Source: Haliotis rufescens (lineage: Eukaryota). From it: DNA of 64,000 nt. The notes below the pieces were generated by a model that had not been told where the DNA came from, did not search any database, and saw nothing but the letters and a program-made list of their open reading frames with translations. The stretch is from positions 84,134,001 through 84,198,000 of the forward strand of contig NW_025963779.1 of the NCBI RefSeq assembly GCF_023055435.1, read 5' to 3'. Both the position numbers and the translations under genes were made by a program. This document shows, piece by piece, positions 18,101 to 57,100 of this stretch (position 1 is its first letter; every line of letters starts with the position of its first letter).

Positions 18101-21100
18101 TAAAATTGGCTGAATTGTGAATATACTTGAACACTACATGTATTTCCAGTTTAATGCAAATCTGCTTCAGTTACGATGTGAAACATACTTTTGATCATGC
18201 TGACATCATTAGCCCCATCTCCTATTGCAAGCGTCACTGATTTCTTGTGTTTCTTGACCAGGTCGACCACGAGGGCCTTCTGGAGCGGCGTGACCCTGCA
18301 GCAGATGACGGCCTTGCAGCTTGACCCCAGGTCCAGCAGCAACCTCTCCAGCTCCGGCTTTAGGGCATACGCCTGTCAGACACAAACATCACATAATGTA
18401 CAACACTCGCGGTAATACACACACCGGCTTCAGGGCATATGCCTGTCAGACACAAACATCACATGACGTACATCACTGGCGGTAATATACAGTCCGGCTT
18501 CAGGGCATACGCCTGTCAGACACAAACATCACATGACTTACATCACTGGCGGTAATACAAACTCTGGCTTCAGGGCATACGCCTGTCAGACACAAATATC
18601 ACATGACGTACATCACTGGCAGTAATACACACTCAGGCTTCAGGGCATACGCCTGTCAGACACAAACATCACATGACGTACATCACTGGCGGTAATACAC
18701 ACCCCGGCTTCAGGGCATATGCCTGTCAGACACAAACATCACATGACGTACATCACTGGCGGTAATACACACTCCGGCTTCAGGGCATACGCCTGTCAGA
18801 CACAAACATCACATGACGTACATCACTGGTGGTAATATACAGTCCGGCTTCAGGGCATACGCCTGTCAGACACAAACATCACATGACGTACATCACTGGC
18901 GGTAATACAAACTCCGGCTTCAGGGCATACGCCTGTCAGACAAAAACATCACATGACGTACATCACTGGCAGTAATACACACTCAGGCTTCAGGGCATAC
19001 GCCTGTCAGACACAAACATCACATGACGTACATCACTGGCGGTAATACACACACTGGCTTCAGGGCATACGCCTGTCAGACACAAACATCACATGACGTA
19101 CATCACTGGCGGTAATACACACACTGGCTTCAGGGCATACGCCTGTCAGACACAAACATCACATGACGTACATCACCGGCGGTAATACACACACCGGCTT
19201 CAGTGCATACGCCTGTCAGACACAAACATCACATAACGTACATCACTGGCGGTAATACACACACCGGCTTCAGGGCATACGCCTGTCAGACACAAACATC
19301 ACATGACGTACATCACTGGTGGTAATATACAGTCCGGCTTCAGGGCATACGCCTGTCAGACACAAACATCACATGACGTACATCACTGGTGGTAATATAC
19401 AGTCCGGCTTCAGGGCATACGCCTGTCAGACACAAACATCACATGACGTACATCACTGGCGGTAATACAAACTCCGGCTTCAGGGCATACGCCTGTCAGA
19501 CAAAAACATCACATGACGTACATCACTGGCAGTAATACACACTCAGGCTTCAGGGCATACGCCTGTCAGACACAAACATCACATGACGTACATCACTGGC
19601 GGTAATACACACACTGGCTTCAGGGCATACGCCTGTCAGACACAAACATCACATGACGTACATCACTGGCGGTAATACACACACCGGCTTCAGGGCATAC
19701 GCCTGTCAGACACAAACATCACATAACGTACATCACTGGCGGTAATACACACACTGGCTTCAGGGCATACGCCTGTCAGACACAAACATCACATGACGTA
19801 CATCACTGGTGGTAATATACAGTCCGGCTTCAGGGCATACGCCTGTCAGACACAAACATCACATGACGTACATCACTGGCGGTAATACACACTCCGGCTT
19901 CAGGGCATACGCCTGTCAGACACAAACATCACATGACGTACATCACTGGCGGTAATACACACTGCAGGGCAGGGCAGATACAAGAAGTGAAACAAAAGGT
20001 GCCCGGACAATGTGTTTTGTAAGTAGTGAGTGAGTGAATGTTGTTTTACGCCGTAGTCAGACATAATCAAAGCACTACTATTACCCCTGTCACTGGATCA
20101 GTGTGCACTCAGCAATCATTCTCAGCTCCCAGGGGAGTATACAACCAAAGCTGCCTGTAAGGTGCAAGAAGGTTAACAACCACATTGTCATCTTCTCCTA
20201 CCGGGTACCCATTCACTGCTTGATGAACAGAGGCACATTTGAACAAAGTCACTTGCCGAAGGAGACACAAACTGTGTTACATGTGCTTCAATGTGGAGCA
20301 GGACTGAAGCCCAAGAAACTCTCAGGAGCCAAGCTGCAGAACACGGTCACCCGTCCAAGGACTCTCCGTGACCGACGTTGCTTAACCTGATTTGTGACCT
20401 GTGCCTTATCACAGTGAATTGTGAATCAGTGGAAGAGCCAAACCAGTGGTTGACAGCATGAACAAGGATCCAAGGAATGATGATCAACTATTTACCTGGG
20501 CCCACTTGCACAAAACGATCTTTGCGCTAAGACTATTGTAAGCCTATGTTAAAGTATGGGAGTTAAGATCATCTTAGCGCTAAGATCGCTTTGTGCATGT
20601 GGGCCCAGGTCATACATTGTGACCACTTCCTCATGTTCCACTATCGTAATATGATAGTGGTCCTTAACTTCTTTTGAGTAGAATACATAGGATACATAGT
20701 GTGTTGTCATCTTCCACAACACCCTTTTTAGATATCTAATTCATATTCTGGACTATAAAATAGCTAGTAATACACCAAGTCTAACAGCACAAATCCTCTC
20801 CTTACCAGACTGTGACCATTTATGACCACTGCAAATTCCCCATATTCATCCGAGATGGCAACATTTCCATTGGCTCCGTTATAGTGGGCTCCCTGGCCGT
20901 TGGCGATGATGACTCCGTCGTTTGGCTTGCCGGTCTTCATCTTGTCAATGTCTTCCAGGGCCTTCCGCAGCTGGGCTTCCACCTCCTCGAAGGAGTCGGC
21001 ATCAATGATGAATGGCTCCTCCATCTCCTCCGTCAACAGGCGGCAAGAGTAACCAATATTGATGGCCGTCTCTGAAACACGGCGCACACTTCTGCTGAAG

Positions 21101-24100: not shown

Positions 24101-27100
24101 CGTGACGAGGTACCAGGAAACACTCGTGACGAGGTACCAGAACACACACGTACACACACGAGGAGGTACCACAACACACACATGACAAGGTACCAGAACA
24201 CACACGTACACACACGACGAGGTACCAGAACACACACGTGACGAGGTACCACAACACACACGACGAGGTACCAGAACACACACGTGACGAGGTACCAGAA
24301 GACATGTGACAAGGTACCAGGAGACACTCATGACGAGGTACCAGAACACACACGTGACGAGGTACCACAACACACACATGACAAGGTACCAGAACACACA
24401 CGTACACACACGACGAGGTACCAGAACACACACGTGACGAGGTACCACAACACACACGACGAGGTACCAGAACACACACGTGACGAGGTACCAGAAGACA
24501 TGTGACAAGGTACCAGGAGACACTCATGACGAGGTACCAGAACACACACGTGACGAGGTACCACAACACACACATGACAAGGTACCAGAACACACATGTG
24601 AACAAAATTCTTTAGTCAAAGGTGTGGTCTTTAGCAAATGTCGAGTGGTATATTAGACATCAATAGAAATGTGCAATATGGAAGGCAAGGGAACTCACAT
24701 TAAGGTGGTGTGAAGTAATTTCCTTCAGTTCAGCACAGGATCTGTCCAAACGCTCGAATATGACTGAGTCAGCCCCCTTACAGTACAGCGTGATGACACC
24801 GTCCTTCTTCACGATCACCTGGAGAACAGACAAACTCACAACCATCACATGGACAAGCAGCTGTTATATCTCACTCACAAATGACTTTTCAAAATGACAG
24901 CCATTTGTAGGAACCAATATTTCATTATTTTGTTAGCTCAAACATCTTTGTCCCCATGACAGAGTTGTGTATCTGGTATAGTGTTGTTCTTACCGACATC
25001 CTCTTACGGAAGTTGTTGAAGTCCAGAATGCACAGCAGATCGTACACTTCCTGTTTGCCCTGGACTTCTATTGTGATGGTGTTTGGTGTCCGAGACTACA
25101 AGCATAGAGACAGGGGTCATGTAAACCTCAGGATATCTGTTGTATGCTACATGCATTATGCAAAGTTAGAGAAGCTCCCAAAGACGAGACCCAGCCTTCC
25201 CAAATATAAGCTTAGAATTTGTATATTTAGGTTTACAATATTTTTTGATGAAAACTACAAAATCTAGCATTTGGTAACTTTCAAACCAATTTCTTAAAGT
25301 TTTGCTCAATTCTTAAATTATGCATAAATTTTTGCCCTCCCCCCCCCCCCCCCCCCCCCCCCCCCACCCACCCACCCACCCACCCACCCAAAGGGCCCTC
25401 TTATCTTACCGTGTCCTTTAACCTGTAGTATGCACAATATTTTAGTGGTGAACACGTTTGCAGTATAAAGAAACAAATGCTTTTCAGGTTCGTTTATTTT
25501 CACATGAATTTTAGGGGTTGTTCAAAATTGAGGACCAAAGTTAAAAGAGTTATCACCGAATGTGTCAATGTGACTTTGACAATGCCAACTTATCTCCCTG
25601 CTACTCATCCCCTAGTTGGCTACAGCTGTATTTACCTGACCCCCTGCTACACATCCCCTAGTTGGCTACAGCTGTATTTACCTGACCCCCTGCTACACAT
25701 CCCCTAGTTGGCTACAGCTGTATTTACCTGACCCCCTGCTACACATCCCCTAGTTGGCTACAGCTGTATTTACCTGACCGCCCTGCTACACATCCCCCAG
25801 TTGGCTACAGCTGTACTTACCTTGAAGACATAACCAAAATTCCGTGCAGCTGACACCAGAGCACCTTCATCAGGGGACTGAGCCTGGTACTCCAGGTTAC
25901 CTGCAACAATGCATGTTGAATGTACATGGAACAAGCACTGGTAAACAGGCAGATATCAGGCATTAGTTGGACATGTTGAAGGGTTCCAGGGCAACATACC
26001 TCGCAGTAGTGGAGGGATCCCTTAGAACATACAACATGCCACAGTCGGCAATGTTTAGGCTGTATTAAAGTGGCCTGAGTGTAATAGTCTACTGAGGACA
26101 GCGCAATGGTAAATAACACATGCAATGATCATGCAATCGAAGTACCACAACACGTGCAGCCATGTCACTTAGTCTGTCTCCAAGACCCTAGAAAATATAT
26201 TAAGAAACAAACCCAACTAAGTCCAGAACGATTTGGTAAGTCTGGATTGCCTCAGCCCTGAAATTAAGCAATGTTTTGGGTTCCATTTGGCTGTAGATAT
26301 CTGTAGATACATATTCTTAAATAAAATAAGTACCATATCACTCAAGTCTTCAAAGGGCATTTAGAAGAGATATACATAAGAGAGAGAATCTATTAATGTC
26401 AACTTCTTTATTCTGAGGAACACAAGGTTTCAGAGTATATATTTACTCTTTCTTCAGGTGAATGGATGAAGTCCATTGTCCAGCTGACATCCACAAAATC
26501 TCACTCGTACCATATCACTGACCAGCTGACCGCCATGTCACGCGGCCCGAACAACAACATACTATTTCTGGATCCCCTCTCGTGACGCTGCCTCAAGGTG
26601 AAGGCTACAAAATGTGGTGCTGCACCTACCACTCTCCTTGGTCTCCGGCATGACTGTATGACACAGACTCAGCAGTCTGAAGAACTCCTCCACCTGGTGG
26701 TTGCCTCCCTTGGTGTGCTCCAGCAGACGCGAGTCGTAAAAATCAAATGACTTCTCTGCATATTCATTCCCACTGAAATCTACTTTGGGAGTTCTCTGGA
26801 ATAGTGGAACAGATTCAGTGTGACTACTTCAACATCATTGAAAACATTTCAACAATCAAAAGGTATAAGACATTTTCATCTGGTTCCTAAAAGTCAGTGA
26901 GTCAAGATTTATCCACTTTGAGCAAATTTCTAGCCACATCACAGTGGGGTCAGCAGAAACCATCTCCCCATATATTACCCATGTGGGAACAGAACCCAGG
27001 GCTTCAGCATCAGCAGCAACACTTGGACCACTGGACTACTCCACAACCAAGTTAAACCATCATCCTACTGGAACATTTTGAATGCCAACACTATGACCAG

Positions 27101-30100
27101 ACAACTCAATGTGTGTATAGCCTATCGGGATGATAACTGAGTGATGTGACACCCGTTTCAATATTTCATAAAAACATAATGTTTTGGCAATGATTCCGTG
27201 AGAATTACAGAAAGTCCTAATGAAATACCTGGCCACACTGTTCAACTGGACCCTGATGTTCACACAACATTGTCAGATACTTCCAACAGCCCAGTATTAT
27301 TGTGAGGTTCTGCAGGACATGACCCATTACAGTGTTACAGTGTTAACAGCAGATCCAGTAGGATGCCATGACAAGCAGCTCATCAGCCATCTTCCCAAGG
27401 CAAGGGAGTTAACGGACAAAATCCAGTTTCAACCCTTGCCGAATTTCATGGCTCCATCGTAGCACCATTGGCTCTTACGAGTTATGTCCCTTCCATTGAC
27501 CAGTCAGATATTCCACGTCTCATCATTTGCATTTGCAAGTTACAGTTTGGCTGACCTAATGAGTCCTAGCATCATCCAATCAAAAGCACATAACAAATCG
27601 CCATCCAGTTCGTAAACAACATGATGACTGCCAGGCAGATTTCAGTTGATTGCATGATTTGCAAAGCATGTGTACCACCAAACGGCATCAACAGAATATA
27701 TCAAATCTGTTCATGCTTTTAATGACCCATTTTACTACATTATAGAACTTGATTATCGATCAAATAATCTTGACTGGGCATCACCATTTTGTCTGAAGCA
27801 AACCTATCCGTGACAACCTACTGTATTCAATGACAACAGAAGGAAACACACCTCTGTGATGTCCTGAGGGTTGCCTTCGTTGTCCAGCGGGTCTCCGTAA
27901 GATTTCCCACCTATAGATGCCTTGTTGAATGTCATGATGTTCTGAAATTAAACAACCAAATGTGAGTCATGTGAGTCACACGTCTTCACCACCTAGGTGA
28001 TTGAGCAAGTGAGTTATATATCTTCTCAGCAAGGTGAGTGAGTGAGTTATACATCATGCCTATGTTAACAATCTTCATACTATACTCACTGGTTAATAAT
28101 TTTCATGCCATATGCACTGGTTAATAATAACTGGTGAGTTAAACATCATGCATATGTTAATAATGTTCATACTACACACATATAGTAATAATGTTCATAC
28201 TACACACATATAGTAATAATGTTCATACAACACTCACTGGTTCATAATCTTCACACAACTTGCATTTGTTAATAATATTCCAGCTATATGTCGGCGGTCC
28301 AGACAATCCAGTGATTGATATCATGTGCATCGATCCACGCAATTGGGATTGATGACATGCATCAACCAAGTCATGAGTCTGTTAATAATCTTCATGTACC
28401 ACTATTGTAAAACAAAGTCTTTCGACATGGACGGCTTGGTGAGGGGCCACTACACCACACCATAACTAGGCGTTCTCAAAGGTGAGATGAGGTGAGGTGA
28501 AATGGGGTTTAACGTCGCGTCCAAGATTATTGCNNNNNNNNNNNNNNNNNNNNNNNNNNNNNNNNNNNNNNNNNNNNNNNNNNNNNNNNNNNNNNNNNNN
28601 NNNNNNNNNNNNNNNNNNNNNNNNNNNNNNNNNNNNNNNNNNNNNNNNNNNNNNNNNNNNNNNNNNNTAGTCTGGACTGATGCCGATTAATAGTGCTAGC
28701 CCACTGAGATACCATGCCGCAGTTTAACATGAATACCCCACTCAGACACAGTATACTGACTCTGAGCCGACCAGTCCTTGTTTTAGCCCCTTAACCCTAA
28801 GCGCCAGACAGGGTAACAACAAGTACCATCTTTTAACGTCTTTTGGTATGACGCGGCCGGGGATCGAACCCCGGACCTTCTACTCTCCAGGTGGACGCTC
28901 TACCACAAGACCACAGAGGCGGTTGGTGTTCTCAAAGACCTTTCCTTTCCCAGTGTAGTTTTCAGTCTTGACCAAACATTCATGAATAATTATTGTATTT
29001 ATCATAATGCATTAAATAGTATTTCAAGTACTTATTTTTAATTAATGTAATATGGTGACTTTAATTAATTTCAACATCCTTTCTAATACTTTGAAATCAC
29101 TAGGCAGCGTCGCAAACTCAACAACACACCTGTGTGAGAGTTCCTGTCTTGTCAGAAAAAATGTATTCAATCTGTCCTAGCTCCTCATTAAGGGTTGTGG
29201 TCCGAGCTTTGGCAGGGGTGTCCTTCTTGTCAAAGTACATCTTGACATCCCAGTTGATCCACAAGCTGTTGACTAGCCGGATTATCTCCACACTGTAAGC
29301 AGGCATTAACACAATCAGTGAGGTTTTCTGTAAATTGAAACATTAACTATATTTGGACACTAAAGCCTGGCATATGTAGTGAACTGTGTACTGCTTCCAG
29401 GTGGACGATGTCCTCAACACTGATGATGGGGACACACTACTCATCTGACATACAGGGAGATGGGGACACACTACTCACCTGACATACAGGGAGATGGGGA
29501 CACACTACTCACCTGACATACAGGGAGATGTGGACACAAAACTCACCTGACATACAGGGGGATTGGGACACACTACTCACCTGACATACAGGGGGATTGG
29601 GACACACTACTCACCTGACATACAGGGGGATTGGGACACACTACTCACCTGACATACAGGGAGATGGGTACACACTACTCACCTGACATACAGGGAGATG
29701 GGTACACACTACTCACCTGACATACAGGGAGATGGGTACACACTACTCATCTGACATACAGGGAGATTGGGACACACTACTCACCTGACATACAGGGGGA
29801 TTGGGACACACTACTCACCTGACATACAGGGGGATTGGGACACACTACTCACCTGACATACAGGGGGATTGGGACACACTACTCACCTGACATACAGGGG
29901 GATTGGGACACACTACTCACCTGACATACAGGGGGATTGGGACACACTACTCACCTGACATACAGGGAGATGGGTACACACTACTCACCTGACATACAGG
30001 GAGATGGGTACACACTACTCACCTGACATACAGGGAGATCGGTACACACTACTCATCTGACATACAGGGAGATTGGGACACACTACTCACCTGACATACA

Positions 30101-33100
30101 GGGAGATGGGTACACACTACTCACCTGACATACAGGGAGATGGGTACACACTACTCACCTGACATACAGGGAGATGGGTACACACTACTCATCTGACATA
30201 CAGGGAGATGGGGACACACTACTCACCTGACATACAGGGAGATGGGGACACACTACTCACCTGACACATAGGGAGATGGGTACACACTACTCACCTGACA
30301 TACAGGGAGATGTGGACACATTACTCATCTAACATACAGGGAGATGGGTACACACTGCTCATCTGACATACAGGGAGATGGGGACACACTACTCACCTGA
30401 CATACAGGGAGATGGGTACATACTACTCACCTGACATACAGGGAGATGGGTACACACTACTCACCTGACATACAGGGAGATGGGTACACACTACTCATCT
30501 GACATACAGGGAGATGGGGACACATTACTCATCTAACATACAGGGAGATGGGGACACACTACTCATCTGACATACAGGGAGATGTGGACACATTACTCAT
30601 CTAACATACAGGGAGATGGGTACATACTACTCACCTGACATACAGGGAGATGGGGACACACTACTCACCTGACATACAGGGAGATGGGTACATACTACTC
30701 ACCTGACATACAGGGAGATGGGTACACACTACTCACCTGACATACAGGGAGATGGGTACACACTACTCATCTGACATACAGGGAGATGGGGACACACTAC
30801 TCACCTGACATACAGGGAGATGTGGACACATTACTCATCTAACATACAGGGAGATGGGGACACACTACTCATTTGACATACAGGGAGATGGGGACACACT
30901 ACTCATCTCATATACAGGGAGATGGGTACACACTACTCACCTGACATACAGGGAAATGGGTACACACTACTCACCTGACATACAGGGAGATGGGTACATA
31001 CTACTCACCTGACATACAGGGAGATGTGGACACATTACTCACCTGACATACAGGGAGATGGGTACACACTACTCACCTGACTTACAGGGAGATGTGGACA
31101 CATTACTCATCTAACATACAGGGAGATGGGGACACACTACTCACCTGACATACAGGGAGATGGGTACACACTACTCATTTGACATACAGGGGAGTTGGGG
31201 ACACACTACTCATCTCACATACAGGGAGATGGGTACACACTACTCACCTGACATACAGGGAGATGGGTACACACTACTCATCTGACATACAGGGAGATGG
31301 GGACACACTACTCACCTGACATACAGGGAGATGGGGACACACTACTCACCTGACATACAGGGAGATGGGTACACACTACTCACCTGACATACAGGGAGAT
31401 GGGGACACACTACTCACCTCACATACAGGGAGATGGGGACACACTACTCACCTCACATATAGGGAGATGGGGACACATTACTCACCTGACATACAGGGAG
31501 ATGGGGACACACTACTCACCTCACATATAGGGAGATGGGGACACACTAATCATCTGACATACAGGGAGATGGGGACACACTACTCACCTGACATACAGGG
31601 AGATGGGGACACACTACTCACCTGACATACAGGGAGATGGGTACACACTACTCATTTGACATACAGGGAGATGGGGACACACTACTCACCTGACATACAG
31701 GGAGATGGGGACACACTACTCACCTGACATACAGGGAGATGGGGACACACTACTCACCTGACATACAGGGAGATGGGGACACACTACTCACCTGACACAT
31801 AGGGAGATGGGTACACACTACTCATCTGACATACAGGGAGATGGGGACACACTACTCACCTGACATACAGGGAGATGGGGACACACTACTCACCTGACAT
31901 ACAGGGAGATGGGTACACACTACTCATTTGACATACAGGGGAGTTGGGGACACACTACTCACCTGACATACAGGGAGAGGGGTACACACTACTCACCTGA
32001 CATACAGGGAGATGGGGACACACTACTCACCTGACATACAGGGAGATGTGGACACAAAACTCACCTGACATACAGGGAGATGGGTACACACTAATCACCT
32101 GACATACAGGGAGATGGGTACACACTACTCACCTGACATACAGGGAGATGGGGACACACTACTCACCTGACATACAGGGAGATGTGGACACAAAACTCAC
32201 CTGACATACAGGGAGATGGGGACACACTACTCACCTGACACATAGGGAGATGGGGACACACTACTCACCTGACATACAGGGAGATGGGGACACACTACTC
32301 ACCTGACATACAGGGAGATGTGGACACAAAACTCACCTGACATACAGGGAGATGGGGACACACTACTCACCTGACACATAGGGAGATGGGGACACACTAC
32401 TCACCTGACACATAGGGAGATGGGGACACACTACTCACCTGACACATAGGGAGATGGGGACACACTACTCATTTGACATACAGGGAGATGGGGACACACT
32501 ACTCATTTGACATACAGGGAGATGGGTACACACTACTCATCTGACATACAGGGAGATGGGGACACACTACTCACCTCACATATAGGGAGATGGGGACACA
32601 CTACTCATTTGACATACAGGGAGATGGGGACACACTACTCACCTGACATACAGGGAGATGGGGACACACTACTCACCTGACATACAGGGAGATGGGGACA
32701 CACTACTCACCTGACATACAGGGAGATGGGGACACACTACTCACCTGACATACAGGGAGATGGGGACACACTACTCATCTGACATACAGGGAGATGGGGA
32801 CACACTACTCATCTGACATACAGGGAGATGGGGACACACTACTCACCTGACATATAGGGAGATGGGGACACACTACTCACCTGACATACAGGGAGATGGG
32901 GACACACTACTCACCTGACATACAGGGAGATGGGGACACACTACTCACCTGACATACAGGGAGATGGGGACACACTACTCACCTGACATACAGGGAGATG
33001 GGGACACACTACTCATCTGACATACAGGGAGATGGGGACACACTACTCACCTGACATACAGGGAGATGGGGACACACTAATCATCTGACATACAGGGAGA

Positions 33101-36100
33101 TGGGGACACACTACTCACCTGACATACAGGGAGATGGGGACACACTACTCACCTCACATACAGGGAGATGGGGACACACTACTCACCTGACATACAGGGA
33201 GATGGGGACACACTACTCACCTGACATACAGGGAGATGGGGACACACTACTCACCTGACATACAGGGAGATGGGGACACACTACTCATCTGACATACAGG
33301 GAGATGGGGACACACTACTCACCTGACATACAGGGAGATGGGGACACACTAATCATCTGACATACAGGGAGATGGGGACACACTACTCACCTGACATACA
33401 GGGAGATGGGGACACACTACTCACCTGACATACAGGGAGATGGGGACACACTACTCACCTGACATACAGGGAGATGGGGACACACTACTCACCTCACATA
33501 CAGGGAGATGGGGACACACTACTCACCTCACATACAGGGAGATGGGGACACACTACTCACCTCACATATAGGGAGATGGGGACACATTACTCACCTGACA
33601 TACAGGGAGATGGGGACACACTAATCATCTGACATACAGGGAGATGGGGACACACTACTCACCTGACATACAGGGAGATGGGGACACACTACTCACCTGA
33701 CATACAGGGAGATGGGGACACACTAATCATCTGACATACAGGGAGATGGGGACACACTACTCACCTGACATACAGGGAGATGGGGACACACTACTCACCT
33801 GACATACAGGGAGATGGGGACACACTACTCACCTGACATACAGGGAGATGGGGACACACTACTCACCTGACATACAGGGAGATGGGGACACACTACTCAC
33901 CTCACATACAGGGAGATGGGGACACACTACTCACCTCACATACAGGGAGATGGGGACACACTACTCATTTGACATACAGGGAGATGGGTACACACTACTC
34001 ATTTGACATACAGGGAGATGGGTACACACTACTCATCTGACATACAGGGAGATGGGGACACACTACTCACCTGACATACAGGGAGATGGGGACACACTAA
34101 TCATCTGACATACAGGGAGATGGGGACACACTACTCACCTGACATACAGGGAGATGGGGACACACTACTCACCTGACATACAGGGAGATGGGGACACACT
34201 ACTCACCTGACATACAGGGAGATGGGGACACACTACTCACCTGACATACAGGGAGATGGGGACACACTACTCACCTCACATACAGGGAGATGGGGACACA
34301 CTACTCACCTCACATACAGGGAGATGGGGACACACTACTCATTTGACATACAGGGAGATGGGTACACACTACTCATTTGACATACAGGGAGATGGGTACA
34401 CACTACTCACCTGACATACAGGGAGATGGGGACACACTACTCACCTGACATACAGGGAGATGGGGACACACTACTCATCTAACATACAGGGAGATGGGGA
34501 CACACTACTCACCTCACATATAGGGAGATGGGGACACATTACTCACCTGACATACAGGGAGATGGGTACGACAGTGTTGAGGATGATGAGGTAAGATAGA
34601 AACACCAGCACAGCAATTGTTGCAGCACCCTGCTCCTTGTCGTCATTCACAAAGGTCTCCCATGGCAGATACAATTGGAAGTCAAAGCCGACCACGCTCT
34701 CCCAGACACCACAAGCAATGGTGGTCACGAGGCACATGGTCAAGAGGAACAGGAATATCTGAAAGGAATAGGTCATACTGTCAGTACAGGACACTTTCCT
34801 ACAGTGTATTCCTGGTCCTTGCTTAAAGTGTTATAGGTCCCTGCATAAAGGGTTATAGGTGCCTGCTTAAAGTGTTATAGGTCCCTGCTTGAAGTGTTAC
34901 AGGTCCCTGCTCAAAGTGTTATAGGTCCCTGCTCAAAGTGTTATAGGTCCCTGCTCAAAGTGTTATAGGACCCTGCTCAAAGTGTTACAGGTCCCTGCTC
35001 AAAGTGTTACAGGTCCCTGCTCAAAGTGATATAGGTCCCTGCTTGAAGTGTTATAGGTCCCTGCTTGAAGTGTTACAGGTCCCTGCTTGAAGTGTTACAG
35101 GTCCCTGCTTGAAGTGTTACAGGTCCTTGCTTAAAGTGTTACAGGTCCTTGCTTAAAGTGTTACAGGTCCTTGCTTAAAGTGTTACAGGTCCTTGCTTAA
35201 AGTGTTACAGCTCCCTGCTTTAAGTGTTATAGGTCCCTGCTTGAAGTGTTATAGGTCCCTGCTTAAAGTGTTACAGGACCCTGCTCACAGTGTTACAGTG
35301 AGTGAGTGAGTGAGTGAGTGAGTGAGTGAGTGAGTATGGTTTTACGCCGCTTTTAGCAATATTCCAGCAATATCACGGCGGGGGACACCAGAAATGGGCT
35401 TCACACATTGTACCCATGTCGGGAATCGAACCCGGGTCTTCAGCGTGACGAGCGAACGCTTTAACCACTAGGCTACCCGACCGCCCACACAGCGTTACAG
35501 GTCCCAGCTTGAAGTGTTATAAGTCCCTGCTTAAAGTGGGACAGGTCCTTGCTTAAAGTGTTACAGCTCCCTGCTTTAAGTGTTATAGGTCCCTGCTTGA
35601 AGTGTTACAGGTCCTTGCTTGAATTGTTACAGGTCCTTGCTTAAAGTGTTACACGACCCTGCTCACAGTGTTGTAGGTCCTTGCTTAAAGTGTTACAGCT
35701 CCCTGCTTGAAGTGTTACAGCTCCCTGCTTGAAGTGTTACAGGTCCCTGCTTGAAGTGTTACAGGTCCCTGCTTGAAGTGTTACAGGTCCCTGCTTGAAG
35801 TGTTATAGGTCCCTGCTTGAAGTGTTATAGGTCCTTGCTTAAAGTGTTACAGCTCCCTGCTTGAAGTGTTACAGGTCCCTGCTTGAAGTGTTATAGGTCC
35901 TTGCTTAAAGTGTTACAGCTCCCTGCTTGAAGTGTTACAGCTCCCTGCTTGAAGTGTTACAGCTCCCTGCTTGAAGTGTTATAGGTCCCTGCTTGAAGTG
36001 TTACAGGTCCCTGCTTAAAGTGTTACAGGTCCTTGCTTAAAGTGTTACAGGTCCTTGCTTAAAGTGTCACAGCTCCCTGCTTAAAGTGTCATAGGTCCCT

Positions 36101-39100
36101 GCTTGAAGTGTTATAGGTCCCTGCTTGAAGTGTTACAGGTCCTTGTTTTAAGTGTTATAAGTCCTTGCTTAAAGTGTTATAGGTCCTTGCTTAAAGTGTT
36201 ACAGGTCCTTGCTTAAAGTGTCATAGGTCCCTGCTCAAAGTGTTATAGGTCCTTGCTTCAAGTGTTATAGGTCCCTGTTAAAGTGTTATAGGTGCCTACT
36301 CAAAGTGTTATAGGTCCTTGCTTAAAGTGGTATAGGTCCCTGCTTAAAGTGTTATAGGTGCCTACTCAAAGTGTTATAGGTCCTTGCTTAAAGTTACATA
36401 GGTCCCTGCTCAAAGTGTTACAGGTCCTTGCTCAATGTGTTATAGGTCCCTGCATAAAGTGTTATAGGTGCCTACTCAAAGTGTTATAGGTCCTTGCTTA
36501 AAGTGGTATAGGTCCCTGCTTAAAGTGTTATAGGTGCCTACTCAAAGTGTTATAGGTCCTTGCTTAAAGTTACATAGGTCCCTGCTCAAAGTGTTACAGG
36601 TCCTTGCTCAATGTGTTATAGGTCCCTGCATAAAGTGTTATAGGTGCCTACTCAAAGTGTTATAGGTCCTTGCTTAAAGTGTTATAGGTCCTTGCTTAAA
36701 GTGTTATAGGACCCTGCTCACAGTGTCACAGGTCCCTGCTTAAAGTGTTACAGGTCCTTGCTTAAAGTGTTATAGGTCCCTGCTCACAGTTTTACAGGTC
36801 CCTGCTTAAAGTGTTATAGGTCCCTGTTTAAAGTGTTACAGGTCCTTGCTTAAAGTGTCACAGGTCCCTGCTCACAGTGTTACAGGTCCCTGCTTAAAGT
36901 GTTATAGGTCCTTGCTTAAAGTGTTACAGGTCCTTGCTCAAAGTGTTATAATCACTATCATGGGTCTGTAGTGCTTAGACTGTTCATTTAAGAATTGACT
37001 TTCACTTCATATGGCAACATTAGGTATGAACCTTCATAGAGTGAGGGCCAAACTTGCAGAGGGCCAGAGCTTGCCGATCATTGAAAGGTGATGATTATAA
37101 TGATACCGTATTCGACGTAATAAGCGCCCGTGGCGCTCTCAAAATAAGAAATAAGGACTCTTATTAGAAAATAATTATGGTGAGAAAAAAACCAGAGTTG
37201 AAAGATTGTAAAGTTTGTTGTTTAGGCTGACAGCCTGAAATGATACAAAAGAAAAGTATGTGCGTATCATACATGACAGATATATTTTCCAGAATTTAAT
37301 TGCCCATAATTAAGGGTGCATATAACACACAAGTGCGTATTATACACAAATAAAAAAGTCTTGTGTACATTGATCAATCGGAAGGTGTGCTAATTGGGAT
37401 TGTTCACTTGCCACTAGCAAATATCGCCGTGGGCGCTTATTAGAGAGGGGCGCTTATTACGTCAAATAAGGTATGTCAAATTGGTACTGAGATAAATTCT
37501 TAGATAGGTGTGGGTTGTCACTGTCAGTCTATGCACAAATCGAGTCAATAGTTTGGGAGTGCATTTCGTTGTTTTGGGCACTAAGATGGGTCTTAGTGAG
37601 GATACTCATGCATGGGCACTATCAGACTTTTCCCAATGTTTGCTAAAATACTTAGTTTAAGATTAAAGGATCTAAAATACCAAAAACAGCACTTCTGTAG
37701 CTATTCATGCTGGGGAATAGGCTATTTATAATGCGCATATTTCCACACAACTGAAGGGAATGCTCAAAGCGTTATTACCCCGGTCACTGGATCAATGTGC
37801 ACTCAAGAATCATTCTCAGCTCCATGGGGAGTATACAACCCAGGCTGCCTGTTTGCCTCTAGAAGGTTTACAACCTCATTGCCATCTCATCCATACCAGC
37901 ATGCCCACCCAAACCCAACACAAGTCAGCCCCATGCAAGCATGGTTGCCGTAAAAGACGACTATGCTTGTCGTAAGAGGCGACTAACATGATCGGGTGGT
38001 GAGGCTCGCTGACTTGATTGATGCATGTCATCGTATCCCAATTGCGTGGATAGATGTTCATGATGTCAATCACTGGATCGTCTTGTCGAGGCTTGATTAT
38101 TTACAGACCACCATCATATAGCTGGAATATTGCTGTGTGCAGCGTTCAACAACAAACAAACAAAGCAAGCATGACGTAACAATGTCCTGTTGCCACAACA
38201 TGCTACAGGCTACAACTCACTCCAACAATGAGGATATTCATGAGTCGGTCGATGTGGGTTCTCTTGAACACTGTCTTGCCGCTGTTCATCATGAGCTTTG
38301 AGTCATGTCCGGCGAAGACGACGAGTCCGTAGCACCACTGGGTGTTCCGCAAGACACATCCCCTCAGCACCACCTTGTCGTTGTCCAGGGAGTAGGTCTC
38401 TCCCTTCCACGTCAACTTGCCCTCAAACTTGCTCAGGCGGATGTTCGGAGCTTCACAGATTATCTCCGCTGTAAAGTGACAAAGCAGGACATTTCAGACA
38501 TTGAAAGTTCCAACATTTCGACACGTCTTTATTATTCACTTTTGCATGTCATTGTTTTTACCAAACAATTGATGAGTCGAGAAACTGAATTGCTCATCTA
38601 AACCATGAAACATTCAGGTGGATTTATGTTATTATATACTATCTATGAAAGCCTTTTTCATGATCCTCGACATACTAAGGCATCATATCCCGTTCTATTG
38701 AGATAAATACCCAGGACCCATTCACCACAAAAGCTTTGTTTCGTTTTGTTCAACCATTTCCATCTCGGTTTTTCTCGGTCCTGAGTCCAATCTGATTGCA
38801 TGCCTTATTTTAAATCAGTGTCTTGTGAAACTAAGCGAATGGGTGCAGCGTATTTATCCTAACAGAATGGAGGAATAACATTCTGAATAATTAAGGATGT
38901 GAGGTGGGGTGAAATTGGGTTTAACGTCGCATCCAAGATTATTGCACTTATATAGCGACGTGCATGCACGTGTGTAATTAAGGATGTGGACAAGTGAGTG
39001 AATTTCTTTTTATACCACAGTGGCCATTAAATGAGGATACCAGTAGGTGGTAGCATGGAGAAAATAGCCACGCCATCAGCTCACAATGACACAGGAGGAA

Positions 39101-51100: not shown

Positions 51101-54100
51101 CAAGTCAAGTAATCCAGTAAAGGACTTGGTTCACTTGACTGCAGTATTGTACTGCACCAACAGCTTGAATTGGCTCTCCCACATCTCCCCTACCCTGGGT
51201 AGAAGAGCATGCATAGGCCAGAATGGGGCGTGTAATGTTGTTCATTATATGACGAACAGCGGGGCCTGGAGTTGGGGTCATGGTGTTTGTGGTATGACTG
51301 GCAATGGGGCCTGGAGTTGGGGTCATGGTGTTTGTGGTATGACTGGCAATGGGGCCTGGAGTTGGGGGTCATGGTGTTTGTGGTATGACTGGCAATGGGG
51401 CCTGGAGTTGGAGGTCATGGTGTTTGTGGTATGACTGGCAATGGGGCCTGGAGTTGGGGTCATGGTGTTTGTGCTATGACTGGCAATGGGGCCTGGAGTT
51501 GGAGGTCATGGTGTTTGTGGTATGACTGGCATTAGGGTCTGTCACATGGGGCCATGGTGTTCATGGTATGACTGGCAATGGGCCTGTTATTTTGGCCATG
51601 GTGTTCATGGTATGACTGGCAATGGGCCTGTTATTTTGGCCATGGTGTTCATGGTATGACTGGCAATGGGCCTGTTATTTTGGCCATGGTATTCATGGTA
51701 TGACTGGCAATGGGCCTGGAGTTGGGGCCATGGTATGACTGGCAATGGGCCTGTTATTTTGGCCATGGCTTTTCATGGTATGACTGGCAATGGGCCTGGA
51801 GTTGGGGCCATGGTCTTCATGGTATGACTGGCAATGGGCCTGTTATTTTGGCCATGGTGTTCATGGTATGACTGGCAATGGGCCTGGAGTTGGGGCCATG
51901 GTGTTCATGGTATGACTGGCAATGGGCCTGGAGTTGGGGCCATGGTCTTCATGGTATGACTGGCAATGGGCCTGTTATTGGGGCCATGGTCTTCGTGGTA
52001 TGACTGCCAATGGGCCTGGAGTTGGGGCCAAGTTGGTCCTTATATGACTGGCAAATCAACTAACGCCATGAAGAAACTAGGCTTCTAGGAGAATGATGGC
52101 AATGTGCCATGTGTTATGAAAGATTGAATGTCAGCATCTCTAGAAGACTAGTCACAATGGTAGCTATATGGCACAATGACACACAGTGGATTTGACCCAC
52201 TTGTTGTTAAAGCATGAAACTTCGCTGAAAGAGATGCTGTCAAAGAATTAATTAGCAATCCCAACAAAAGATCAAATTCATGTCTCACCCTTCTTCTCAT
52301 CTTTTATACAAGATGAGTTGTGTGCACATGGTACATCTAAACATGGGTCTACTAAACCTGTTAAATCTAATGTGGTAACTTTATAGAGGTTCATTATCCA
52401 TGAAAAAAGACCTTAAACCTGGAACTCTTTAAATCCATATTTGGAACAAAGTTCTTTAGATACTATTATCAGACAATATGCCTGATAATAAAAGCAAATA
52501 AAAAAATTCAACGCAATTGTTCCAGTGAATGGCAGATTGTTGATTTTACAAAAGTATATGTTTCAAAGTGCACACTGAAGGTTTACTGAACTCTGTGTTT
52601 GTGGTTGCATGTTTACAAACACACTGATTGTTCCACTACAACAACAGAACCGAGACATGATTTTTTTTATTGGGACATAAACACAAAAAAACAAAACCAT
52701 AGCATAACTCCCTCATGCTCCTGTGCATGATGCAACTCGGGAAAGGACGAGCTGTCGTCATCTCAACAAAATGGTGTGATCCAAAGCAAAACTTTCCCCC
52801 AGAATCAAATTCCAGGACATGATGTATAGGTCTGACACATGGTCATGCAACTTGGCATCATCTGAACATCATTCCATAACCTAAAAATAGAATATTAAAT
52901 GAATAATTGATTCTCAATATAACAGAGTGTAAACAGACACCAGTTTTTGAGATTGGCAAAATGAATCCATCAAAATAACTCAAGGTGGACTGGGTATATG
53001 ACAGATGCAAGCAAAGCACGAAGGACATATTATAATATTGCAGGCTCCAAGTGCAGTAGCAGGTTATAAGCAGTGCAGGGGAGCTGGCGATGGTCAAGCC
53101 CAACCATGTGTGACTTACGAAATCATCGATTGCATCCTTGATGGCCGACACCGTGAGCACGAACACCAATGGAATGATGGTGGTCACAGGACTAAGTGAT
53201 GTTACAGCTGGAATAAACTATTAAAGGCAACATGGTAAACATTGGCACATGCTGGTTCATACAAGCATTGGCACATGCTGGTTCATACAAAGATTGGCAC
53301 ACAATCGTTCATAAAGACATTGGTACACACTGGTTCATACAAACATTGGTACAAACTGGTTCATACAAACATTGGTACACACTGGTTCATACAAACATTT
53401 GCACATGCTGGTTCATACAAACATTGGCACACACTGGTTCATACAAACATTGGCACACACTGGTTCATACAAAGATTGGCACACAATCGTTCTTAAAGAC
53501 ATTGGTACACACAGGTTCATACAAACATTGGTACACACTGGTTCATACAAACATCGGCACACACTGGATCATACAAACATTGGCACACACTGGATCATAC
53601 AAACACTGTCACACACTGGATCATACAAACACTGTCACACACTGGTTCATACAAACACTGGCACACGCTGGATCATACAAACATTGGCATACACTGATTC
53701 ATAAAAACACTGGCACACACTGGATCATAAAAACACTGGCACACACTGGATCATACAAACACTGGCACACACTGGTTCATACAAACATTGGAACACACTG
53801 GTTCATACAAACATTGTCACACACTGGATCATACAAACATTGGCACATGCTGGTTCATACAAACATTGGCACACACTGGTTCATACAAACACTGGCACAC
53901 ACTGGTTCATACAAACATTGTCACACACTGGATCATACAAACATTGGCACAGACTGGTTCATACAAACACTGGCACACTGGTTCATACAAACATTGTCAC
54001 ACACTGATTCATAAAAACATTGGCACACACTGGATCATACAAACATTGTTACACACTGGAACATACAAACACTGTCACACACTGGTTCATACAAACACTG

Positions 54101-57100
54101 GCACACGCTGGATCATACAAACATTGGCATACACTGATTCATAAAAACACTGTCACACACTGATTCATAAAAACATTGGCACAGGCTGGATCATACAAAC
54201 ACTGGCACACGCTGGATCATACAAACATTGGTACACACTTGTTCATACAAACATTGGTACACGCTGGTTCATACAAACATTGGTACACACTGGTTCATAC
54301 AAACATTGGCACACACTGGATCATACAAACATTGGCACACACTGGATCATACAAACATTGGCACACACTGGATCATAAAAACACTGGCACACACTGGATC
54401 ATACAAACACTGGCACACACTGGTTCATACAAACATTGGCACACACTGGTTCATACAAACACTGGCACACACTGGTTCATACAAACATTGGCACACACTG
54501 GATCATACAAACATTGGCACAGACTGGTTCATACGAACACTGGCACACTGGTTCATACAAACATTGTCACACACTGGATGATACAAAACATTGTCACACA
54601 CTGATTCATAAAAACATTGTCACACACTGGATCATACAAACATTGTTACACACTGGATCATACAAACACTGGCACACACTGGTTCATACAAACATTGGCA
54701 TACACTGATTCATAAAAACATTGTCACCCACTGATTCATAAAAACATTGTTACACACTGGATCATACAAACACTGGCACACACTGGTTCATACAAACATT
54801 GGCATACACTGATTCATAAAAACATTGTCACCCACTGATTCATAAAAACATTGGCACACACTGGATCATAAAAACACTGGCATACACTGATTCATAAAAA
54901 CATTGTCACCCACTGATTCATAAAAACATTGTTACACACTGGATCATACAAACACTGGCACACACTGGTTCATACAAACATTGGCATACACTGATTCATA
55001 AAAACATTGTCACCCACTGATTCATAAAAACATTGGCACACACTGGATCATAAAAACACTGGCACACGCTGGATCATACAAACATTGGCACACACTTGTT
55101 CATACAAACATTGTCACACACCGGTTCATACAAACACTGGCACACACTGATTCATAAAAACATTGGCACACACTGATTCATAAAAACATTGGCACACACT
55201 GATTCATAAAAACAGAGCTACTGAAAAACAAAATATTAGTGACCTGGTTCCATGTACAAGCATACTGATTGGGTGAACATGCTGCAGTGGCATAATCACT
55301 TGTTAATAACATGCAGAAGATGCAGTGGTTTGAGTCCAGGATAACATAGTATATCACAATAACCTAAAATTTGTTATCAGACCAGTCAATCCAGTGGTTG
55401 ATAGCGTGTGGGTCTGGACCAGACAAGCCTGTGGTTGACAGCGTGTGGGTCTGGACCAGACAAGCCTGTGGTTGACAGCGTGTGGGTCTAAACCAGACAA
55501 GCCTGTGGTTGATAGTGTGTGGGTCTGAACCAGACAAGCCTGTGGTTGATAGTGTGTGGGTCTGAACCAGACAAGCCTGTGGTTGACAGCGTGTGGGTCT
55601 GGACCAGACAAGCCTGTGGTTGACAGCGTCTGGGTCTGGACCAGACAAGCCTGTGGTTGATAGTGTGTGGGTCTAAACCAGACAAGCCTGTGGTTGACAG
55701 CGTGTGGGTCTAAACCAGACAAGCCTGTGGTTGATAGTGTGTGGGTCTGAACCAGACAAGCCTGTGGTTGATAGTGTGTGGGTCTGAACCAGACAAGCCT
55801 GTGGTTGACAGCGTGTGGGTCTGGACCAGACAAGCCTGTGGTTGACAGCGTCTGGGTCTGGACCAGACAAGCCTGTGGTTGATAGTGTGTGGGTCTGGAC
55901 CAGACAAGCCTGTGGTTGACAGCGTGTGGGTCTAAACCAGACAAGCCTGTGGTTGATAGTGTGTGGGTCTGAACCAGACAAGCCTGTGGTTGATAGTGTG
56001 TGGGTCTGGACCAGACAAGCCTGTGGTTGACAGCGTGTGGGTCTAAACCAGACAAGCCTGTGGTTGATAGTGTGTGGGTCTGAACCAGACAAGCCTGTGG
56101 TTGATAGTGTGTGGGTCTGAACCAGACAAGCCTGTGGTTGACAGCGTGTGGGTCTGGACCAGACAAGCCTGTGGTTGACAGCGTCTGGGTCTGGACCAGA
56201 CAAGCCTGTGGTTGATAGTGTGTGGGTCTGGACCAGACAAGCCTGTGGTTGACAGCGTGTGGGTCTAAACCAGACAAGCCTGTGGTTGATAGTGTGTGGG
56301 TCTGAACCAGACAAGCCTGTGGTTGACAGCGTGTGGGTCTAAACCAGACAAGCCTGTGGTTGATAGTGTGTGGGTCTGAACCAGACAAGCCTGTGGTTGA
56401 CAGCGTGTGGGTCTGAACCAGACAAGCCTGTGGTCGACAGCATGTGGGTCTGGACCAGACAAGCCTGTGGTTGACAGCGTGTGGGTCTAAACCAGACAAG
56501 CCTGTGGTTGACAGCATCTGGGTCTGGACCAGACAAGCCTGTGGTTGACAGCATCTGGGTCTGGACCAGACAAGCCTGTGGTTGATAGTGTGTGGGTCTG
56601 AACCAGACAAGCCTGTGGTTGACAGCGTGTGGGTCTGGACCAGATAACCAGTGGTTGATAGTGGGTGCCCAATCACCTCCAAACTTGGCTCACAAGCTGG
56701 TCTGGGTACCCAATCACTTCCAAGCCTGGCTCACCAGCTGGTCTGGGTACTCCATCACTTCCAAACATGGCTCACCAGCTGGTCTGGGTACCCCATCACT
56801 TCCAAACATGGCTCACCAGCTGGTCTGGGTACCCAATCACTTCCAAGCCTGGCTCACCAGCTGGTCTGGGTACCCCATCACTTCCAAACATGGCTCACCA
56901 GCTGGTCTGGGTACCCCATCACTTCCAAACATGGCTCACCAACTGGTCTGGGTACCCAAGCACCTCCAAGCCTGGCTCACCAGTTCTTCTTTAGCTCAGT
57001 GAGAAGACAAGACCAGGTTAGTAGTTCCTTTGGTAAGTCACTGACACAATACTGCTATCAGACAGAACGTGCTGCAACAAGAACATGCAAGACAAAGACA

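What the first reader, a model, noticed from the sequence alone, without database searches (positions are those of the whole stretch)
29424..34566. An intron made almost entirely of about 150 tandem copies of its own 5' splice junction, each also a recursive-splice-like CAG|GTGAGT site
Seen: on the sense strand the 34-nt unit is CCCATCTCCCTGTATGTCAG|GTGAGTAGTGTGTC, i.e. the last 20 nt of the exon (codons for the conserved PISLYVS motif) plus the first 14 intron bases. The array fills about 5.1 kb of the 5.25-kb intron and begins inside the exon. Most copies keep a perfect CAG/GTGAGT donor; some are broken (CAGATGAG, CAAATGAG). Reading past the first donor gives GTC AGG TGA, so using any downstream donor as the exon end creates an immediate stop. 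Each unit also has a pyrimidine-rich tract followed by CAG then GT, the signature of a recursive (zero-length exon) site. Inference: either the spliceosome strictly picks the first of about 150 identical donors, or the intron is removed stepwise, or copy number tunes productive splicing versus NMD. It is also the substrate predicted by the AG|GT tandem-duplication model of intron gain.
Basis: partly seen in the sequence, partly recalled or inferred. Interest (0 to 1): 0.85.

Follow-up and report, generated by a model that had tools for sequence, protein, structure and literature searches.

The report
Splice-donor minisatellite in flippase intron
An intron of a lipid-flippase gene is filled by 151 tandem copies of its own exon end plus splice donor, but the messenger RNA is still cut at the first copy, so this is a very large example of an already described repeat type ("mirage" minisatellite).

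Summary
Window 29425-34566 is a 34-nt x 151.2 tandem array. On the sense (minus) strand its unit is the last 20 nt of a P4-ATPase (ATP8B-like) exon plus the first 14 intron bases. It fills 5122 of the 5254 intron bases. 96 units keep CAG|GTGAGT, 110 keep GT and 41 have A at +1.

RNA-like contigs from four public runs (three organism labels, four studies) lie exactly on exon 34547-34758. They continue with window 29263-29292, so the mature mRNA joins the first donor to the ordinary acceptor at 29292. No end was seen at an internal unit.

The kind is known. Minisatellites whose first monomer spans an exon-intron boundary are described for human F7, IFI6, CBS, LMNB2 and PDGF (PMC1557585). In amphioxus they are called "mirages" (PMC3087553).

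The same gene holds two more such arrays, and another gene (locus L012) holds one. The scan has already noted many in other windows of this genome.

Recursive removal is untested. The unit lacks a branch-site consensus and the intron is short. The intron was not gained through the array, because the closest homologues elsewhere break at the same position.

Verdict: a tolerated, very large new member of a known kind. Array length is unverified by long reads.

The parts
34547..34758 (-). Exon of the P4-ATPase (TM3-TM4 region, ends ..[10 protein letters not shown] plus AG of the Ser codon). Its last 20 nt are the first part of repeat unit 1.
   Evidence: Translation, and phmmer against PDB chains finds ATP8B1. 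tblastn with P0038, P0106 and P0114. RNA-like contigs lie exactly on 34547-34758 in four runs.
34541..34549 (-). Authentic 5' splice site CAG|GTGAGT (cut between 34547 and 34546). It is the first of 110 GT-bearing copies.
   Evidence: Sequence. All four long contigs leave the genome at 34547 and continue with exon sequence 29292-29263.
29425..34566 (-). 34-nt x 151.2 minisatellite. Each unit is 20 nt of exon end plus 14 nt of intron start. 96 units carry a perfect CAG|GTGAGT and 41 carry A at +1.
   Evidence: TRF; unit-by-unit listing and per-position table; unique in the genome.
29293..29424 (-). Unique 3' tail of the intron: the leftover CCCATC half-unit, branch-site-like motifs (CTCAC at -27, CTGAT at -23), pyrimidine tract and acceptor gcttacag.
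   Evidence: Sequence; motif scan.
29130..29292 (-). Next exon (S)[54 protein letters not shown], which holds the P-type ATPase phosphorylation motif DKTGT.
   Evidence: phmmer against PDB chains: ATP8B1, E = 1.2e-21. The loose ends of the spliced contigs equal 29263-29292.

Best explanation
This is a 'mirage'-type minisatellite: an ordinary intronic tandem repeat whose founding unit straddled an exon-intron boundary.

Origin (inferred). A 34-nt segment (20 exon bases plus 14 intron bases) was duplicated, probably by slippage between two CCCATC hexamers 34 nt apart. One hexamer is in the exon and one is still visible as the 0.2-copy remnant at 29425-29430. The array then expanded to 151 copies by unequal exchange or slippage. 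This happened in a genome whose introns are about 45% minisatellite.

Why it is tolerated. The duplication grows into the intron, so the exon and its first donor stay intact.

Splicing (shown). The mature mRNA joins the first donor (34547) to the normal acceptor (29292).

Why the first donor wins (inferred, by analogy with human F7 IVS7). Selection follows 5'-to-3' order, through co-transcriptional commitment, oriented scanning or exon definition of the 212-nt exon. The roughly 109 downstream GT copies stay silent, or give stop-bearing RNAs that are degraded.

The array itself most likely has no function.
For: Array anatomy.

Gene identity: P4-ATPase, ATP8B-like.

Splicing: one long contig in each of three RNA-like runs and two overlapping contigs in the fourth (three organism labels, four studies). 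They end exactly at 34547 and 34758 and continue with window 29263-29292 and 38221-38250. No loose end was reported at internal unit CAGs.

Genomic context: 15 arrays occupy 41.6% of the 46-kb gene span and 45% of intron bases. 3 of the 15 span a splice junction, against 0.77 expected under random seeding with exon-disrupting seeds removed (P about 0.04). This is close to a neutral by-product. More cases exist: the 70-nt x 23 acceptor array at 18352-19963, the 46-nt x 4.9 donor array at 25596-25822, and a 32-nt x 34 donor array after a nuclear-receptor-like exon in L012.

No sign of selection on the splice core: 6 variant states per 9 core positions against 16 per 25 elsewhere.

No other product: no Rfam family and no long ORF.

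Precedent: F7, IFI6, CBS, LMNB2 and PDGF minisatellites with only or mostly the most upstream donor used (PMC1557585), and amphioxus 'mirages' that do not disturb splicing (PMC3087553).
Against: Contigs drop rare variants, so low-level use of internal donors, especially if removed by NMD, cannot be excluded.

The runs are only guessed to be RNA, although exon-exact contigs argue for it.

Three junction-spanning arrays in one gene is marginally more than the seed model predicts.

The single most common unit variant is G>A at donor position +1 (41 of 151). The -1 G>A variants (11 of 11), the -3 C>T variants (6 of 6) and most +5 G>T variants (6 of 7) sit in those dead units. This could hint at weak selection against decoy donors, or simply reflect one old sub-lineage of units.

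Array length has not been confirmed by long reads.
Confidence: 0.8

Rival explanations
1. The intron is removed stepwise. Each unit's pyrimidine tract plus CAG acts as a 3' splice site that regenerates the same donor (recursive, zero-length-exon splicing). Any donor-to-unit-CAG step recreates the same junction, so all paths converge on the correct mRNA.
For: Each intact unit has a 75% pyrimidine stretch, then CAG, then GTGAGT. This is the AG/GT juxtaposition that defines recursive sites (PMC6110457). By construction every intermediate is sequence-identical to a shorter array, so the spliced contigs cannot exclude it.
Against: The consensus unit has no yUnAy branch motif, while the unique tail has CTCAC and CTGAT at -27 and -23. 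The intron is 5.25 kb, and recursive sites are reported for the longest fly introns (over 10-40 kb; PMC6110457). The pyrimidine-rich stretch is simply the codons for PISLYV. No intermediate was observed.
Confidence: 0.1
2. Copy number tunes gene output. A fraction of transcripts use internal donors, acquire the TGA 3 nt past the junction and are degraded by NMD, so longer alleles give less productive mRNA.
For: Every internal-donor product carries the stop (..YVR*). 96 decoys are as strong as the authentic site. In F7 minigenes only perfect-consensus pseudo-sites could compete (PMC1557585).
Against: No contig end or junction at an internal unit in four runs. In F7, identical pseudo-sites stay silent. 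No allele or expression data exist.
Confidence: 0.06
3. The array length, or the array itself, is an assembly artefact.
For: No spanning long read was examined. Short-read contigs cannot size a 5-kb array.
Against: The array has 32 unit types, two 1-nt insertions and local blocks of variants, and no N, in a 94-Mb contig. 14 DNA-like runs, with 20 runs from 9 studies in all, hold 15-43% of the sampled words. Array-unit contigs occur in all four runs laid.
Confidence: 0.04
4. The intron was created by the AG|GT tandem duplication (Rogers model), with donor and acceptor coming from copies of one proto-splice site.
For: The unit contains CAG|GT, and mirage repeats have been proposed as a route to intron gain (PMC3087553).
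Against: The acceptor used (29293) lies in unique sequence, not in a unit. Seven genomic gene-call fragments of the closest homologues elsewhere (P0001, P0002, P0004, P0005, P0007, P0012, P0014) lose similarity exactly before S|VEI(I/L)RL, so the intron position is shared.
Confidence: 0.02

Closest known systems
Human F7 intron 7 VNTR (37 bp, 5-9 copies), together with the IFI6 (6-16), CBS IVS13, LMNB2 and PDGF minisatellites (PMC1557585)
   Same: The first monomer spans the exon-intron boundary, so the authentic donor is followed by identical pseudo-donors. In F7, LMNB2 and PDGF only the most upstream donor is used, as seen here in spliced contigs.
   Different: Here there are 151 copies (5.1 kb) against 5-26. 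The unit takes 20 exon bases (4 in F7). Authentic and pseudo-sites are the perfect consensus CAG|GTGAGT (F7: UGG|gugggu). The host is apparently a mollusc, a species label I did not verify. No mutational test was done here.
Amphioxus 'mirage' minisatellites (Adh3, globin genes; PMC3087553)
   Same: Minisatellite-like tandem duplications of exon/intron boundaries at both 5' and 3' exon ends. They recur in many genes of a minisatellite-rich invertebrate genome, leave normal splicing undisturbed and have been discussed as raw material for intron gain.
   Different: The reported amphioxus arrays have a few to tens of units (3 and 6 in the two BflGb6 haplotypes). This one has 151 short units. Length instability was shown there and not tested here.
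Recursive splice sites / ratchet points (Drosophila, vertebrates; PMC6110457)
   Same: A 3' splice-site-like tract sits against a 5' splice site around AG|GT, and use would regenerate the donor and leave the final mRNA unchanged.
   Different: Known sites are single, conserved and lie in very long introns. Here they are a by-product of repeating the PISLYV codons plus the donor, in a 5-kb intron, without a branch-site consensus and without any observed intermediate.

Membership tests
Junction-spanning ('mirage' / F7-type) minisatellite | Head-to-tail array of 10-100-bp units inside an intron | tested here: met
   Period 34, 151.2 copies, 94% matches.
Junction-spanning ('mirage' / F7-type) minisatellite | The first monomer spans the exon-intron boundary, so the splice donor is reiterated | tested here: met
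   Unit 1 (34566-34533) is 20 exon bases plus 14 intron bases. 110 units keep GT and 96 keep CAG|GTGAGT.
Junction-spanning ('mirage' / F7-type) minisatellite | Normal mRNA uses the outermost (most upstream) donor | tested here: met
   Contigs of four RNA-like runs join 34547 to 29292. Rare isoforms cannot be excluded.
Junction-spanning ('mirage' / F7-type) minisatellite | Copy-number polymorphism or instability | not tested
Junction-spanning ('mirage' / F7-type) minisatellite | Pseudo-sites are functional when the authentic site is disabled | not testable with these tools
   Needs minigene mutagenesis as in PMC1557585.
Recursive splice site (ratchet point) | [quoted passage not shown] | tested here: met
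   75% pyrimidine over -22..-3, then CAG|GTGAGT, in 96 units.
Recursive splice site (ratchet point) | Located in a very long intron | tested here: not met
   The intron is 5254 nt. Recursive sites are reported for introns over 10-40 kb (PMC6110457).
Recursive splice site (ratchet point) | A usable branch site upstream of the internal AG | tested here: inconclusive
   The consensus unit has no yUnAy. Only UGA and UCA cores are present, and metazoan branch sites are degenerate.
Recursive splice site (ratchet point) | Observed intermediates (junction reads, sawtooth pattern, lariats) | not testable with these tools
   Intermediates are sequence-identical to a shorter array. Lariat or nascent long-read data are needed.
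Intron gained by tandem duplication of an AG|GT segment | The intron is absent from close relatives or homologues | tested here: not met
   Seven homologous genomic fragments break at the same S|VEIIR position. A distant paralogue (L014) lacks the intron.
Intron gained by tandem duplication of an AG|GT segment | Donor and acceptor derive from two copies of the same duplicated site | tested here: not met
   The acceptor used is in the unique 132-nt tail.

The most novel reading that the evidence does not exclude
The array is not inert. Its roughly 100 consensus CAG|GT sites may be used in a path-independent, self-correcting stepwise removal of the intron, where any donor joined to any unit CAG regenerates the same junction. 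Alternatively, as a 5-kb U1-binding tract, its allele length may set how much productive flippase mRNA is made. With its many such arrays, this genome would then be a natural library for dissecting 5' splice-site choice among identical sites.
Probability: 0.1. Interest if true: 0.6.

Novelty: new member of a known kind. Interest (0 to 1): 0.3.

Why it matters
This is about the most extreme natural case of a classic splicing puzzle: one authentic donor followed by about a hundred equally perfect copies, and the cell still makes the right mRNA.

It extends the F7-type "most upstream site wins" behaviour to far more and far stronger decoys, and apparently to a mollusc (a species label I did not verify).

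With its sister arrays it gives ready-made constructs for testing oriented scanning, exon definition and NMD clean-up.

It does not reveal a new mechanism, and it is not an intron-gain event.

Tried and rejected
Pfam on the two short exons gave no family. Gene identity came from PDB sequence search and tblastn instead.

The weak genome hits to the unit are other arrays. L011 is an unrelated 29-nt array. L012 is an independent donor-spanning array.

A genome-wide pattern of three consensus donors spaced 15-45 nt apart gave 2901 matches, against 1827 for the reversed control pattern. That is not a strong enrichment. It counts matches rather than arrays, and at least one 29-nt unit recurs at two C1 places (about 7.32 and 12.53 Mb), so it cannot be junction-derived at both. 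I did not use this as evidence.

An RNA fold of five units is lower than shuffles (z = -3.84), but the ensemble is diffuse and the centroid is unpaired. This gives no specific masking structure.

Rfam: no family. ORFs: none longer than 86 aa.

Read laying: I laid only exon F plus 2.3 units (34470-34813). Array length and polymorphism were therefore not examined, and the tool's own advice not to compare depths was followed.

I could not fetch the orthologous intron of relatives to see the pre-expansion state.

One paper reading failed on a too-short search term.

The species name (red abalone) comes only from earlier scan notes and was not verified.
Full report
**What is there**

Tandem Repeats Finder reports one array at window 29425-34566: period 34, 151.2 copies, 94% matches, no indels, score 8929. 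I read it on the minus strand and cut it into units. The consensus is CCCATCTCCCTGTATGTCAG|GTGAGTAGTGTGTC. 47 units equal it, there are 32 unit types, and two units carry a 1-nt insertion (at 31948 and 31199).

The first unit, 34566-34533, is the last 20 nt of an exon plus the first 14 nt of the intron.
- That exon is 34758-34547 and ends ..[10 protein letters not shown] plus AG.
- The next exon starts at 29292, after gcttacag. It reads (S)VEIIRL...DKTGTLTQ and ends at 29130.
- The intron is 5254 nt. The array fills 5122 nt of it and leaves a unique 132-nt tail.

**The gene**

The 54-aa exon matches ATP8B1 chains at E = 1.2e-21, and the 70-aa exon aligns to ATP8B1 up to PISLYV. Pfam gave nothing on such short pieces. 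Three full-length P4-ATPases from a library search map about 19 exons on the minus strand, from about 60979 to 14755.

**Unit statistics**

| Donor state | Units |
|---|---|
| CAG\|GTGAGT | 96 |
| GAG\|GTGAGT | 13 |
| CAG\|GTGATT | 1 |
| A at +1 (no donor) | 41 |

- G>A at +1 is the commonest variant in the unit (27%).
- All 11 of the -1 G>A variants, all 6 of the -3 C>T variants and 6 of the 7 +5 G>T variants sit in units that already have A at +1.
- Units are copied rather than independent. Counting distinct variant states instead, the splice core (-3..+6) has 6 states in 9 positions, against 16 in 25 elsewhere. That shows no constraint and no accelerated decay.
- Dead and live units are interspersed. 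The longest live run is 15 units and the longest dead run is 4.
- Reading past the first donor gives ..YVR*, so any internal-donor product carries a stop.

**What the RNA shows**

The run search found DNA-like runs of two organism labels holding 33-43% of the sampled words. Six small RNA-like contig sets hold 15-19%.

I laid four RNA-like runs (X17, X20, X15, X19; three organism labels, four studies) on 34470-34813. That stretch is the exon plus 2.3 units.
- In three of the runs one long contig (1812, 5564 and 488 nt) lies exactly on 34547-34758 and leaves the genome at both exon edges. In the fourth (X20) two overlapping contigs (298 and 225 nt) together cover the exon and leave it at the same two edges.
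- The loose end beyond 34547 is window 29263-29292.
- The loose end beyond 34758 is window 38221-38250, which is flanked by a GTGAGT donor.
- So the mature mRNA joins the first donor to the ordinary acceptor.
- No loose end was reported at an internal unit's CAG.
- Short contigs of array units are also present. They could come from pre-mRNA or from DNA carry-over. I draw no conclusion from depths, as the tool advises.
- The organism-C contig differs at 4 of 212 exon bases, and that run also holds array-like pieces. The array therefore probably predates that split (inference).

**Origin (inference)**

The array ends with CCCATC followed by unique ATCAGTG... The pre-expansion intron therefore probably began GTGAGTAGTGTGTC then CCCATCATCAG. 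That places a CCCATC hexamer 34 nt downstream of the CCCATC in the exon. A 6-nt flanking direct repeat fits minisatellite birth by slippage between non-contiguous short repeats; that model is my own knowledge and was not tested here. The unit is unique to this locus in the 1.33-Gb assembly.

**Context**

The gene span carries 15 arrays, which make up 41.6% of its 46 kb and 45% of its intron bases. Three of them span a splice junction:
- this array;
- a 46-nt x 4.9 array that starts at the donor after ..GYVFK (25596-25822);
- a 70-nt x 23 array that repeats the last 48 intron bases plus the first 22 exon bases before the GDGAND exon (18352-19963).

A simple model (random seeds, with seeds lying wholly inside exons removed) expects 0.77 spanning arrays, so P(3 or more) is about 0.04. 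This is marginal at best.

A weak similarity hit led to a fourth case in another gene. In L012 an exon ending ..LFSALVLISP (weakly nuclear-receptor-like, E = 0.0016) is followed by 34 copies of its last bases plus CAG|GTAAGT.

Earlier notes of this scan list many more in this genome. Their follow-ups call it red abalone and use the term "mirage". I did not verify the species.

**Comparison with what is known**

PMC1557585 describes the human F7 IVS7 37-bp VNTR. Its first monomer spans the exon 7/IVS7 boundary and only the most upstream of 5-9 identical donors is used. The authors explain this by 5'-to-3' oriented scanning. The paper also lists IFI6 (25 pseudo-sites, the first two used), CBS, LMNB2 and PDGF.

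PMC3087553 describes "mirages" in amphioxus. These are tandem duplications of either exon boundary that do not disturb splicing, and the paper already discusses them under Rogers' AG/GT intron-gain model.

The present array meets every sequence-level criterion of this class, and it meets the splicing criterion. It is larger and has stronger sites than the published cases.

**Recursive splicing**

The unit has the AG/GT juxtaposition and a 75% pyrimidine tract. Any donor joined to any unit CAG would regenerate the same junction. Intermediates are therefore invisible to junction reads, and all paths would converge on the correct mRNA.

Three points weigh against it:
- The unit has no yUnAy branch motif, while the unique tail has CTCAC and CTGAT at -27 and -23.
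- The intron is short compared with known recursive introns (PMC6110457).
- The pyrimidine tract is simply the PISLYV codons.

I rate it at about 0.1.

**Intron gain**

This reading is rejected. The acceptor is in unique sequence. Seven genomic fragments of the closest homologues elsewhere lose similarity exactly before S|VEI(I/L)RL. A distant paralogue in this genome has no intron there.

**Other checks**

There is no Rfam family and no ORF above 86 aa. Array RNA folds better than shuffles (z = -3.84) but has no defined structure.

**Verdict**

The array is a tolerated, very large mirage / F7-type minisatellite, a new member of a known kind.

Still open: confirmation of the array length by long reads, low-level use of internal donors, and stepwise removal.

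Noticed in passing
window 18352-19963 (minus strand): A 70-nt x 23 array repeats the last 48 intron bases (pyrimidine tract and CAG) plus the first 22 bases of the exon [19 protein letters not shown]. That gives about 22 decoy acceptors upstream of the real one. Unlike the donor array, use of an upstream copy would not be self-correcting.
   Followed up: partly
window 25596-25822 (minus strand): A 46-nt x 4.9 array starts at the donor of the exon ending ..GYVFK (AAG|GTAAGT). It repeats TCAG|GTAAAT four more times.
   Followed up: partly
window 60662-60857 and 53237-55214: Two more arrays stop just short of splice sites. One begins 9 nt into the intron after the donor at 60866. The other ends 30 nt before the acceptor at 53207.
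   Followed up: partly
L012:4821-5903 (G000:C113, about 5.345 Mb), minus strand: A 32-nt x 34 array follows an exon ending ..LFSALVLISP (weak match to nuclear-receptor ligand-binding domains, E = 0.0016). It repeats CCATCTCCCCAG|GTAAGTCAGTGCATGTGTCC, so it is an independent donor-spanning array. It shares GTGTCCCCATCTCCC with the flippase unit, probably only because that similarity is how it was found.
   Followed up: partly
window 14755-60979: Fifteen unrelated minisatellite arrays make up 41.6% of the gene span and 45% of its intron bases.
   Followed up: yes
window 34533-34546 compared with the other units: The authentic donor is followed by GTGAGTAATG. 138 of the 151 units have GTGAGTAGTG, which creates a UAG at +6..+8. 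Whether that UAG acts as a silencer of the decoys is pure speculation.
   Followed up: no
window 34696: All four runs laid show A where the assembly has G. This is probably a variant private to the assembled individual.
   Followed up: no
L014 (G000:C583, about 46.978 Mb): A paralogous P4-ATPase reads ..VIPLPMYVSLELVKIAQ.. without interruption. The intron that hosts the array is absent from this paralogue.
   Followed up: partly
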